A stretch of 64,000 nucleotides of DNA from Octopus sinensis (GCF_006345805.1 NC_043004.1:85994001-86058000); one strand, 5' to 3'. Positions 36,347-36,930 are shown, counted from the first letter of the stretch. The notes: generated by a model from the sequence alone, not told the origin. Made by a program: numbers and translations.

Positions 36347-36930
36347 GGCGGCGAGCTGGCAGAAACGTTAGCACGCCGGGCGAAATGCTTAGCGGTATAC
36401 CATCTGCCGTTACGTTCTGAGTTCAAATTCCGCCGAGGTCGACTTTGACTTTCATCCTTTCGGGGTCGATTAAATAAGTTCCAGTTGCGCACTGGGGTCA
36501 ATATTATCGACTTAATCCGTTTGTCTGTCCTTGTTTGTCCTCTCTGTGTTTAGCCCATTGTGGGTAGTAAAGAAATAGGTATTTGGTCTGCCGCTACGTT
36601 CTGAGTTCAAATTCCGCTGAGGTTGACTTTACCTTTCCTCCTTTCGGGGTCAATTAAATAAGTACCAGTTTCGCGCTGGGGTCGATCTAATCGACTTAAT
36701 CCATTTGTCTGTCCTTGTTTGTCCTCTCTGTGTTTAGCTCCTTGTGGGTAGTAAAGAAATAGGTATTTCGTCTGTCTTTATGTTCTGAGTTCAAATTCCG
36801 CTGAGGTTGACCTTGCCTTTCATCCTTTCGGAATCGATAATTTCAGTACCAGTTGCGTACTGGAGTTGATCTAATTTACTGTCCCCCTCCCAAAACAATT
36901 TCGGGCCTTGTGCTTAGAGTAGAAAATAAT
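36347..36930 (+). mobile_element. Multimeric family A SINE: one head, three cores (period ~184 bp)
   Basis: GTTCTGAGTTCAAATTCC occurs three times; inner units end ..TAAAGAAATA|GGTATTT; last unit has the monomer-type tail. Confidence 0.9.

What the first reader, a model, noticed from the sequence alone, without database searches (positions are those of the whole stretch)
36347..36930. Self-targeting SINE multimers: LINE-tailed units inserted at a fixed site in the SINE's own tRNA-like head
Seen: this locus, 58781-59338 and 61278-61756 share one architecture: one head, inner units, and a last unit with the ordinary monomer tail. Inner units end in a different tail; 36535-36575 matches the 3' terminus of the Tx1-like LINE (23386-23426) at 32/41 ungapped positions. 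That tail joins directly to GGTATTT(C/G/T)GTCT, the sequence that normally follows GCTTAGC in the head. Inner units read CTG(C/G)CG(T/C)TACG whereas monomers and the last unit here read CTGTCTTTA. Established: SINEs borrow LINE 3' tails; Tx1-clade elements are often site-specific, including for other repeats; R2 can form seamless 5' junctions by homology. Inference: a subfamily with a Tx1-type tail is repeatedly target-primed into one site of existing family A SINEs with a homologous 5' join, growing head-to-tail arrays. I do not know of a description of this, but could not search.
Basis: partly seen in the sequence, partly recalled or inferred. Interest (0 to 1): 0.85.

Follow-up and report, generated by a model that had tools for sequence, protein, structure and literature searches.

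The report
Composite three-unit SINE in an octopus genome
Three copies of an octopus short interspersed repeat each carry one head, two head-less units with a tail borrowed from another retroelement, and a final ordinary unit; they look like composite retrocopies stitched together at a hairpin-linked hot spot, not like a repeat that homes into itself.

Summary
Three loci (36347-36929 +, 58781-59339 -, 61277-61757 -) each have one head, two 184-bp inner units ("I-type") and a last unit of the ordinary monomer type ("M-type"). The I-type tail matches the last ~50 nt of an element at 22966-23432 (32/41 ungapped; 0/500 shuffles). Five of six I-tail ends abut GGTATTT, consensus position 48.

The proposed mechanism is not supported:
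- The donor element has no ORF, so "Tx1-like" cannot be tested.
- That element sits inside (TATC)n, not in a SINE head.
- One junction lands at head position 14/15 instead.
- All three arrays have exactly two inner units.
- Inner and last units show no age difference.
- Array A carries one 16-19 bp target-site duplication around the whole array.
- In 76 kb of Octopus bimaculoides, an I-type monomer has an ordinary non-SINE flank with its own duplication.

New finding: position 47|48 is the 3' edge of the tetraloop of a 13-bp hairpin that is stable only in the sense RNA. It is also a breakpoint for internal deletions in other copies.

Best reading (confidence about 0.5): composite or chimeric SINE retrocopies, joined at the RNA/cDNA level (reverse-transcriptase template switch or RNA ligation) and inserted whole. 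This is a new variant of a known kind, of moderate interest.

The parts
36330..36345 (+). 5' copy of the target-site duplication of array A (TAAATGTGAGGAAATA; extendable to 36328-36345)
   Evidence: It matches 36930-36945 at 15/16 positions. The extended 19-nt comparison gives 17/19.
36347..36393 (+). Head of array A (47 nt). It contains the 5' arm and tetraloop of the predicted hairpin (positions 31-47).
36394..36577 (+). Inner unit A1 (I-type body plus borrowed tail; the tail occupies about 36512-36577)
36578..36761 (+). Inner unit A2 (I-type). It starts at consensus position 48, directly after the AAAGAAATA end of A1.
36762..36929 (+). Last unit A3 (M-type body plus ordinary monomer tail). 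It also starts at position 48.
36930..36945 (+). 3' copy of the target-site duplication of array A (TAAATGGGAGGAAATA)
58781..59339 (-). Array B: truncated head 59339-59315, B1 59314-59130, B2 59129-58946 (both I-type), B3 58945-58781 (M-type, AAATTAAG sub-lineage)
61277..61757 (-). Array C: head 61757-61712, C1 61711-61631 (I-type with internal deletion), C2 61630-61451 (I-type), partial head 61450-61428, C3 61427-61277 (M-type). It carries the exceptional junction at head position 14/15.
22966..23432 (+). ORF-less element flanked on both sides by (TATC)n. Its last ~50 nt are the source of, or a sister to, the I-type tail.
7022..7236 (+). Solitary full-length M-type monomer, used as the reference for head-body continuity. 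It lies 20 bp downstream of a 5'-truncated M copy at 6855-7001.
24885..25019 (+). Solitary M-type monomer, cut off at consensus position ~135

Best explanation
The three loci are composite SINE retrocopies with the layout head - I - I - M. Two SINE subfamilies share head and body. M has the ordinary tail. I has acquired the 3' terminus of another retroelement, whose copy sits at 22966-23432.

I infer that units are joined at the RNA/cDNA level. A SINE RNA that ends, or is abandoned by reverse transcriptase, at position 48 is continued at the exact 3' end of an I-type RNA. This could happen by reverse-transcriptase template switching with re-initiation on the borrowed tail, or by prior RNA ligation. 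Position 48 is the 3' edge of the tetraloop of a 13-bp sense-RNA hairpin.

The product has one head and one terminal M tail. It is inserted as a single unit by ordinary target-primed reverse transcription. At least part of it, the head-I-I dimer or the whole trimer, most likely exists as a transcribed master, because every array has exactly two I units.

Shown: the architecture, the two subfamilies, the tail homology, the hairpin position, the duplication around array A, the equal apparent ages, and an I-type monomer with a normal flank.

Inferred: RNA-level joining, the existence of a master, and the cause of the hot spot.
For: 1. One 16-19 bp target-site duplication flanks the whole of array A. 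Nothing flanks its inner units.
2. All three arrays have exactly two I units and one M unit.
3. Inner units are 87-91% identical both within and between arrays, a star-like pattern. Body singleton rates are 3.6% for inner and 4.5% for last units, p=0.49.
4. All six junctions have zero spacer and keep the complete tail end AAAGAAATA. The downstream partner starts at position 48 (five cases) or 14/15 (one case). A precise 3' end joined to a variably 5'-shortened partner is the signature of chimeric retrocopies.
5. Position 47|48 is the loop/3'-arm boundary of a hairpin. As sense RNA it folds at -19.5 kcal/mol, z=-2.9, 0/200 shuffles. As antisense RNA or as DNA of either strand it folds no better than shuffles. 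It is paired in 85% of cells over 24 copies, against 38-55% for slid registers.
6. The same 3' breakpoint recurs in internal deletions of unrelated copies: C3 lacks 38-47, L030:66405 lacks 37-47, and window 39175 lacks 32-47.
7. I-type is a normal mobile SINE. A monomer in O. bimaculoides has a non-SINE flank and the duplication ATAAGGCCTA.
8. Array A has no run of four or more T on the sense strand, so a read-through Pol III transcript of the whole composite is possible.
9. Precedent exists. LINE reverse-transcriptase template switches occur at specific sites next to predicted hairpins, including a tripartite chimera flanked by a 14-bp duplication (PMC2104539). RtcB ligation produces U6/L1 chimeric RNA before retrotransposition (PMC6789731).
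Against: - There are only three arrays and one usable extra locus.
- No position-specific differences between first and second I units were found that would prove a fixed master.
- The last units fall into two M sub-lineages (A3 and C3 with monomer 7022; B3 with 6855 and 24885), and array C has a different I|M junction. A single master therefore cannot explain everything. Several joining events, or recombination, are needed.
- Double template switches were rare in the fungal precedent (1 of 34 chimeras). Three out of three trimers therefore needs a pre-formed dimer or trimer master, which has not been seen directly.
- Hairpin covariation is not statistically significant.
- Reverse transcriptases usually pause before a hairpin, not after copying its 3' arm, so the cause of the hot spot is unexplained.
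- Target-site duplications of arrays B and C are ambiguous because they lie in low-complexity DNA.
Confidence: 0.5

Rival explanations
1. I-type RNA is repeatedly target-primed into resident M-type SINEs at a fixed site in the head (between GCTTAGC and GGTATTT) by a site-specific Tx1-type LINE. The 5' junction forms by homology with the resident head, so arrays grow in place.
For: - The I-type tail is tied to position 48: five of six junctions, against none of seven for other adjacencies, p=0.0047.
- All six I tails in the window are followed by SINE sequence.
- The last units belong to two M sub-lineages shared with solitary monomers, as expected if different resident copies were hit.
- Half of the M-type tails in the window lie in arrays.
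- L1-Tx1 LINEs are reported as active in O. vulgaris (PMC13282606).
Against: - No reverse-transcriptase or endonuclease ORF is linked to the donor element. Its only copy lies in (TATC)n, not in a SINE head.
- One junction is at position 14/15.
- Every array has exactly two I units; none has one.
- There is no detectable age difference.
- There is no target duplication at the inner junctions.
- An I-type monomer in O. bimaculoides has a non-SINE flank with its own duplication.
- The structural feature at the site is specific to sense RNA, not DNA.
- The bottom-strand primer at this site would not base-pair with the I-type RNA 3' end (read directly from the sequence).
Confidence: 0.12
2. Sequential tail-adjacent insertion. 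An I-type SINE inserts first. Later SINE RNAs are primed at or next to its tail and are 5'-truncated at a reverse-transcriptase stop at position 48, so arrays grow from left to right in place.
For: - Head-to-tail adjacency is a general habit of this SINE family: 13 same-strand adjacencies of 30 bp or less and none on opposite strands, among 49 segments in 140 kb (binomial 2.4e-4).
- In L030 66626-65991, three adjacent copies differ clearly in divergence. A near-consensus copy sits 3 bp after an old degenerate one, so sequential insertion does occur.
- The outer target-site duplication would be kept.
Against: - In all seven non-array adjacencies the downstream copy is essentially full-length (starts at consensus 1-11) and is separated by a 3-20 bp spacer. 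Array junctions have no spacer and start at position 48.
- The last units are not younger than the inner ones.
- A new insertion primed at the tail/flank boundary should duplicate flank sequence between the tail and the new unit. That is not seen in array A.
- The same three-step history would have had to occur at all three loci.
Confidence: 0.15
3. DNA-level tandem duplication or unequal crossing-over: an incipient SINE-derived satellite, as described in squamates.
For: - The architecture is tandem units with a longer terminal unit reaching the SINE terminus, like the SINE-derived satellites of PMC10702118.
- The window does contain one recent DNA-level tandem duplication: two identical 1005-bp LINE fragments at 28.4-30.4 kb.
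Against: - Units within an array are no more similar to each other than to units of other arrays.
- Inner and last units belong to different subfamilies across the whole body.
- The same register is found at three unlinked loci.
- Arrays are short (n=2) and not homogenised.
- The hairpin is not stable as DNA.
Confidence: 0.08

Closest known systems
Chimeric retroelements formed by LINE reverse-transcriptase template switching (U6-L1 type; Magnaporthe WEIRD/Mg-SINE/MGL bipartite and tripartite chimeras, PMC2104539)
   Same: - The parts are fused directly in one orientation.
- The 3' part is 5'-shortened.
- The upstream part ends at its exact 3' terminus.
- One target-site duplication surrounds the whole chimera.
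- Switching is concentrated at specific sites next to predicted hairpins, with no microhomology.
- Double switches give three-part products.
   Different: - Here all parts are members of one SINE family, so the product is a head-to-tail multimer with a fixed register.
- Three-part products are the rule (three of three) rather than rare.
- The donor site lies after the 3' arm of the hairpin.
- The acceptor is specifically the subfamily with the borrowed tail.
Dimeric or trimeric composite SINEs that retrotranspose as one unit (Alu and other dimeric SINEs mentioned in PMC10702118 and PMC4758252)
   Same: Several SINE-derived modules sit behind one promoter-bearing head and are copied as a unit with a single target-site duplication.
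   Different: - The classical cases join whole RNA-gene-derived monomers.
- Here the added modules lack the first 47 nt (the A-box part of the head).
- The internal modules keep a complete LINE-type tail.
- A master copy has not been shown.
Tandem SINE multimers in rodents and bats (B2 40%, Dip 49%, Ves 11.5% of copies; PMC8466645)
   Same: Head-to-tail SINE concatenation is very frequent. Those authors also could not decide between integration into tails and dimeric templates. The general same-strand adjacency seen here (13 to 0) is the same phenomenon.
   Different: Those multimers consist of full-length units joined through A-rich tails. The arrays here have head-less units, no spacer and a fixed internal breakpoint.
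SINE-derived satellites of squamate reptiles (PMC10702118)
   Same: Tandem repeats are made from part of a SINE, with a longer terminal unit reaching the SINE end.
   Different: There is no long array, no homogenisation and no within-array relatedness. The units come from two subfamilies.
RtcB-mediated RNA ligation before retrotransposition (U6/L1 chimeric RNA, PMC6789731)
   Same: The defined 3' end of a Pol III RNA is joined to a 5'-OH end created by endonucleolytic cleavage of another RNA, and the product is then retrotransposed. Here the last 6 nt of the I tail (GAAATA) can pair with nt 3-8 of the unit (TATTTC). That pairing imitates the hairpin's 5' arm and gives a stem-loop geometry like that of a tRNA-ligase substrate.
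   Different: This is entirely inferential here. No RNA data are available, the end chemistry is unknown, and the complementarity was noticed after the fact.

Membership tests
SINE (LINE-dependent short retroposon) | Short, non-coding, dispersed, flanked by target-site duplications | tested here: met
   There are 49 segments in 140 kb. Duplications are seen at array A (15/16) and at the O. bimaculoides I-type monomer (ATAAGGCCTA).
SINE (LINE-dependent short retroposon) | Head derived from a Pol III RNA gene (tRNA) with A and B boxes | tested here: inconclusive
   ARAGORN finds no tRNA. Rfam finds no tRNA at either gathering or E<=10 thresholds. A B-box-like GAGTTCAAATTCC and a weak A-box-like TAGCACGCCGG are visible by eye only.
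SINE (LINE-dependent short retroposon) | 3' tail shared with a partner LINE | tested here: inconclusive
   The I tail matches the last ~50 nt of 22966-23432. That element has no ORF, so its LINE nature is presumed, not shown.
Composite (multimeric) SINE retrotransposed as a unit | Single target-site duplication around the whole multimer | tested here: met
   Array A: 36330-36345 and 36930-36945. Arrays B and C are ambiguous because they lie in low-complexity DNA.
Composite (multimeric) SINE retrotransposed as a unit | Constant architecture among copies | tested here: met
   Three of three arrays have head + 2 I + 1 M. Array C differs at the I|M junction.
Composite (multimeric) SINE retrotransposed as a unit | Position-specific diagnostic substitutions shared between copies (proof of a master) | tested here: inconclusive
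   The seven informative sites conflict with each other. None separates first from second units.
Chimeric retrocopy by reverse-transcriptase template switching | Upstream part ends at its exact 3' terminus and downstream part is 5'-shortened, fused directly in the same orientation | tested here: met
   Six of six junctions.
Chimeric retrocopy by reverse-transcriptase template switching | Switch sites are non-random and associated with RNA secondary structure | tested here: met
   Five of six junctions are at the loop/3'-arm edge of a sense-RNA-specific hairpin. The same breakpoint occurs in three internal deletions.
Chimeric retrocopy by reverse-transcriptase template switching | Direct demonstration that joining happens during reverse transcription or at the RNA level | not testable with these tools
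   This needs RNA data or a retrotransposition assay.
Site-specific Tx1-clade LINE and dependent SINE | Partner LINE encodes a Tx1-clade reverse transcriptase and endonuclease | tested here: not met
   There is no coding sequence in or next to 22966-23432. tblastn with 121 LINE proteins hits only 28419-30257.
Site-specific Tx1-clade LINE and dependent SINE | The LINE itself occupies the same target as its SINE | tested here: not met
   The only copy lies within (TATC)n.
Site-specific Tx1-clade LINE and dependent SINE | All dependent SINE copies occupy the specific target | tested here: not met
   The O. bimaculoides I-type monomer has a non-SINE flank. The UniRef ORF P0001 also reads non-GGTATTT sequence after the tail. 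One window junction is at position 14/15.
SINE-derived satellite | Array units are each other's closest relatives, or the arrays are long and homogenised | tested here: not met
   Identity is 0.89-0.90 within arrays and 0.87-0.91 between arrays. Each array has only two inner units.

The most novel reading that the evidence does not exclude
Multimerisation is programmed by RNA structure. The SINE RNA is cut in, or reverse transcriptase leaves at, the tetraloop of its anticodon-arm-like hairpin, exactly before G48. The borrowed tail of the I subfamily ends in GAAAUA, which imitates the hairpin's 5' arm and pairs with UAUUUC at nt 50-55. The I-type 3' end is therefore positioned for joining to G48, either by tRNA-ligase-type RNA ligation or by a tethered template jump. 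This would be a SINE subfamily whose captured tail makes it concatenate onto relatives.
Probability: 0.15. Interest if true: 0.75.

Novelty: new variant of a known kind. Interest (0 to 1): 0.4.

Why it matters
Octopus genomes are about 8-12% SINE (PMC13282606), and most of those families are unclassified. A composite SINE with a fixed, structure-linked junction gives a concrete, countable marker for how SINE modules are exchanged, whether by template switching or by RNA ligation. That process is usually inferred only from finished products.

If the junction hot spot reflects cleavage or reverse-transcriptase exit at a tRNA-like loop, it would link tRNA-fragment biology to SINE evolution. It would also explain why these repeats break genome assemblies: two I-type copies in the O. 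bimaculoides locus abut assembly gaps.

If the arrays are simply a trimeric master, this is an ordinary addition to the list of composite SINEs. It would still matter for repeat annotation, because the inner units would otherwise be scored as separate 5'-truncated insertions.

Tried and rejected
- Exact-pattern scans for the tail 18-mer in metagenome and viral contigs gave 27 loci, none with any SINE similarity, so all were chance hits.
- Scans for the 25-nt SINE core in bacterial/archaeal genomes and viral contigs gave nothing.
- A protein search with an antisense SINE ORF found only one O. bimaculoides UniRef entry, and that entry is not on record in any assembly.
- A search with the window's LINE ORF found no octopus chromosome-scale hits. 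The two closest relatives lie on ~1 kb contigs with no SINE content.
- A search with consensus SINE ORFs gave four O. bimaculoides proteins. Only one could be traced to DNA; it became L030, the single extra locus.
- Rfam found no ribozyme, tRNA or other family in the arrays. I therefore dropped a retrozyme or rolling-circle (hammerhead) origin for the tandem units.
- I first thought the ordinary M and older tails also resembled the donor element's terminus. Alignment against shuffles rejected this.
- Microhomology at the junctions (GAAAT shared by the tail and the head) would predict a junction that keeps GCTTAGC. That junction is not seen.
- A test for an age difference between inner and last units gave 5.9% against 8.9% divergence from the consensuses. 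The difference disappeared when only body singletons were counted.
- Hairpin covariation is not distinguishable from shuffles.
- The literature searches found no description of these arrays, or of an octopus SINE with this tail. The octopus genome paper itself could not be read.

Full report
**What is there**

The window is octopus-like DNA. SINE-derived ORFs hit only Octopus bimaculoides proteins. The window is AT-rich and full of microsatellites.

The locus 36347-36929 reads as follows:
- a 47-nt head;
- two 184-bp units (36394-36577 and 36578-36761) that each end in ...GTAGTAAAGAAATA;
- a third unit (36762-36929) that ends in the tail seen in solitary copies.

The same plan is present on the minus strand at two other loci:
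- 58781-59339, where the head is 5'-truncated;
- 61277-61757, where the first unit has a ~100-bp internal deletion.

Tandem Repeats Finder reports period 184/185 at the first two loci.

**Two subfamilies**

Alignment of all units with solitary copies shows that inner units ("I-type") and last units or monomers ("M-type") differ in more than the tail. They also differ at four body positions or motifs:

| I-type | M-type |
|---|---|
| CCGYTACG | TCTTTAYG |
| GATTAAATAAG | GATAAATTAAG-like |
| GCGCAC | GCGTAC |
| GATATAAT | GATCTAAT |

The arrays are therefore composites of two subfamilies, not duplications of one copy. An older family with a third tail is also present, for example at 6506-6694 and 39765-39964.

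**The tail**

Only the six I tails in the window come close to it.

A gapped local alignment covers about 50 nt (40 identical positions, one 3-nt gap) and runs to the common terminal AAAGAAA. It scores 40, against a maximum of 22 in 500 shuffles. The M and older tails do not match that element. The I tail in O. bimaculoides matches it too, at 33/41.

The donor, 22966-23432, is a 467-bp stretch without an ORF, bracketed by (TATC)n on both sides. The only LINE coding sequence in the window is at 28419-30257. "LINE 3' end" is therefore plausible, but "Tx1-like" is untested.

**The junction**

All six I-tail ends are followed directly by SINE sequence, with no spacer. Five continue at GGTATTT, which is consensus position 48. 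One (C2|C3) continues at head position 14/15, with 23 nt of head and then GGTATTT after a 10-nt deletion.

**Tests of the rival histories**

1. *Local duplication.* Inner units are 0.89-0.90 identical within arrays and 0.87-0.91 between arrays. The few informative sites conflict with each other. There is no local-duplication signal.
2. *Age.* Divergence from the subfamily consensus looked higher for last units (about 9%) than for inner units (about 6%). Counting only singletons in the shared 118-nt body gives 3.6% against 4.5% (Fisher p=0.49). There is no demonstrable age difference.
3. *Target-site duplication.* Array A is flanked by TAAATG[T/G]GAGGAAATA (15/16; 17/19 when extended) around the whole array. 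Arrays B and C lie in low-complexity DNA and are uninformative.
4. *Copy number.* All three arrays have exactly two I units.
5. *Last units.* A3 and C3 share derived states with solitary copy 7022. B3 shares three or four states with solitary copies 6855 and 24885, and with all the O. bimaculoides M copies. The I|M junction was therefore probably made more than once, or the parts have recombined.

**Extra genomic sample**

A search with consensus SINE ORFs returned an annotated O. bimaculoides protein. Its gene gave 76 kb of chromosome CM046612.1, held as L030.

L030 holds one complete I-type monomer at 40897-40605 (-). The duplicated stretch around its N10 gap looks like an assembly overlap. 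Its tail is followed by unique sequence and the duplication ATAAGGCCTA. A second I-type copy runs into an assembly gap. There is no head-I-I-M array in L030.

I-type is therefore an ordinary mobile SINE that does not need a SINE head as its target.

**A general habit of the family**

Among 49 SINE segments in window plus L030, 13 neighbouring pairs lie within 30 bp on the same strand and none on opposite strands (binomial 2.4e-4).

- In the seven non-array pairs, the downstream copy starts at consensus 1-11 and is separated by a 3-20 bp spacer.
- In the six array junctions there is no spacer, and the downstream unit starts at position 48 (five cases) or 15 (one case).

The difference is significant (Fisher p=0.0047).

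One cluster, L030 66626-65991, joins copies of clearly different divergence. Sequential tail-adjacent insertion therefore exists in these genomes. The arrays in question are a distinct, tail-specific phenomenon.

**Why position 48?**

RNA folding places positions 31-43 and 48-60 in a 13-bp hairpin (four G·U pairs) closed by the tetraloop UAGC (44-47). The junction is exactly the loop/3'-arm boundary.

| Form folded | Energy (kcal/mol) | z-score |
|---|---|---|
| Sense RNA | -19.5 | -2.9 (0/200 shuffles) |
| Antisense RNA | -8.6 | +0.72 |
| Sense-strand DNA | -7.3 | -0.43 |
| Antisense-strand DNA | -7.0 | -0.42 |

Over 24 copies from both sequences the helix is paired in 85% of cells, against 38-55% for slid registers. 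Covariation is not significant.

Three unrelated copies carry internal deletions whose 3' breakpoint is again 47|48:
- C3 lacks 38-47;
- L030:66405 lacks 37-47;
- window 39175 lacks 32-47, with the boundary ambiguous because of a GG.

Two more copies have deletions centred on the loop.

The last 6 nt of the I tail (GAAATA) are the reverse complement of unit nt 3-8 (TATTTC). They imitate the hairpin's 5' arm (GAAAT). A small GAAAU/AUUUC hairpin with loop AGGU is part of the predicted fold of the junction. I noticed this after the fact and its relevance is unknown.

**Interpretation**

A precise upstream 3' end, a variably 5'-shortened downstream partner, direct fusion, one head, one outer target-site duplication and a hot spot tied to sense-RNA structure together form the pattern described for chimeric retrocopies made by LINE reverse-transcriptase template switching. 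In Magnaporthe, switches occur at specific sites next to predicted hairpins, without microhomology, and a three-part chimera carries a 14-bp duplication (PMC2104539).

RNA ligation before retrotransposition, as shown for U6/L1 with RtcB (PMC6789731), is an equally possible joining step.

Because three of three arrays are trimers, a pre-formed head-I-I or head-I-I-M master that is transcribed as a whole is likely. Array A has no run of four or more T on the sense strand.

I put about 0.5 on [quoted passage not shown]. The rivals stand as follows:
- sequential tail-adjacent insertion with a reverse-transcriptase stop at position 48: 0.15;
- DNA-level duplication: 0.08;
- the remainder is unassigned.

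- No Tx1 identity can be shown.
- The donor element's own copy lies in (TATC)n, not in a SINE head.
- One junction falls at a different head position.
- No target duplication surrounds the inner units.
- The number of inner units is fixed.
- Inner and last units have the same apparent age.
- An I-type monomer has a normal flank.
- The only structural feature at the site exists in RNA, not DNA.

Its core intuition survives: this tail is non-randomly tied to one position of the SINE, and the junction may have been made more than once.

**Comparison with the literature**

Tandem SINE multimers are common in rodents and bats (B2 40%, Dip 49%, Ves 11.5%). Their origin was left open between tail integration and dimeric templates (PMC8466645). 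SINE-derived satellites with a longer terminal unit exist in squamates (PMC10702118). Template switching is the accepted route for module exchange in mollusc SINEs (PMC4758252).

I found no description of head-less, LINE-tailed inner units at a fixed hairpin-edge junction, nor of this octopus subfamily, in the searchable library. Repbase, Dfam and SINEBase could not be consulted.

**Verdict**

The self-targeting mechanism is not supported. The most likely explanation is a composite SINE assembled at an RNA-structure-linked hot spot. This is a new variant of a known kind, with interest 0.4. The sample is small (three arrays in 64 kb, plus 76 kb of a related genome), so the ranking of mechanisms is provisional.

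Noticed in passing
window 28385-30370: Two tandem, 100% identical ~1005-bp copies of a 5'-truncated LINE 3' part. 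Each has a 271-aa ORF with a zf-RVT match, and each ends in and is preceded by (TAA)n. This is a recent DNA-level tandem duplication of a (TAA)n-associated LINE, reminiscent of Dong/R4. Relatives at 50-60% identity are widespread in echinoderms, corals and shrimp.
   Followed up: partly
window 22900-23500: The 467-bp ORF-less element that shares its terminus with the I tail is nested in a (TATC)n/(ATCT)n microsatellite. It contains a 27-bp direct repeat and a long pyrimidine-rich tract. It may be a microsatellite-specific retroelement.
   Followed up: partly
window+L030 (e.g. L030 4035-4575, 20531-20779, 37223-37622, 65991-66626; window 6855-7236): SINE copies of this superfamily are very often directly adjacent head-to-tail: 13 same-strand pairs and no opposite-strand pairs. 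Some upstream copies are cut at consensus position ~135-140 (the ...AAATAAGT motif). This suggests that A-rich tails and an internal A-rich motif are preferred integration points.
   Followed up: partly
window 39175-39370, 6506-6694, 61427-61450; L030 66340-66406, 66555-66630: The predicted hairpin (positions 31-60) is a deletion hot spot. Five of about 24 full-length copies have deletions there, and three of those have the 3' breakpoint at 47|48.
   Followed up: yes
L030 40783-40797 and 68700-68934: Assembly gaps in the O. bimaculoides chromosome fall inside I-type SINE copies. The first gap is flanked by duplicated sequence and looks like an unresolved overlap. The second gap hides whatever follows the start of an I-type unit. 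Arrays may be under-represented in assemblies.
   Followed up: no
proteins P0122-P0125 (O. bimaculoides): Annotated or UniRef gene models (PLAT-domain, MFS, cytochrome P450 and an uncharacterised protein) end in, or contain, translated SINE sequence in sense or antisense. This is either SINE exonisation or an annotation artefact.
   Followed up: no
window 25586-25930, 53601-54623: Remnants of mariner/Tc1-like transposase genes (Transposase_1 and DDE_3 matches).
   Followed up: partly
window ~12740-12840: A run of N (assembly gap) lies inside a microsatellite-rich stretch.
   Followed up: no
window 24885-25019: An M-type monomer stops abruptly at ...GATAAATTAAGTAC (consensus ~135) and is followed by unrelated sequence. 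Several tandem units in L030 are truncated at the same point.
   Followed up: no
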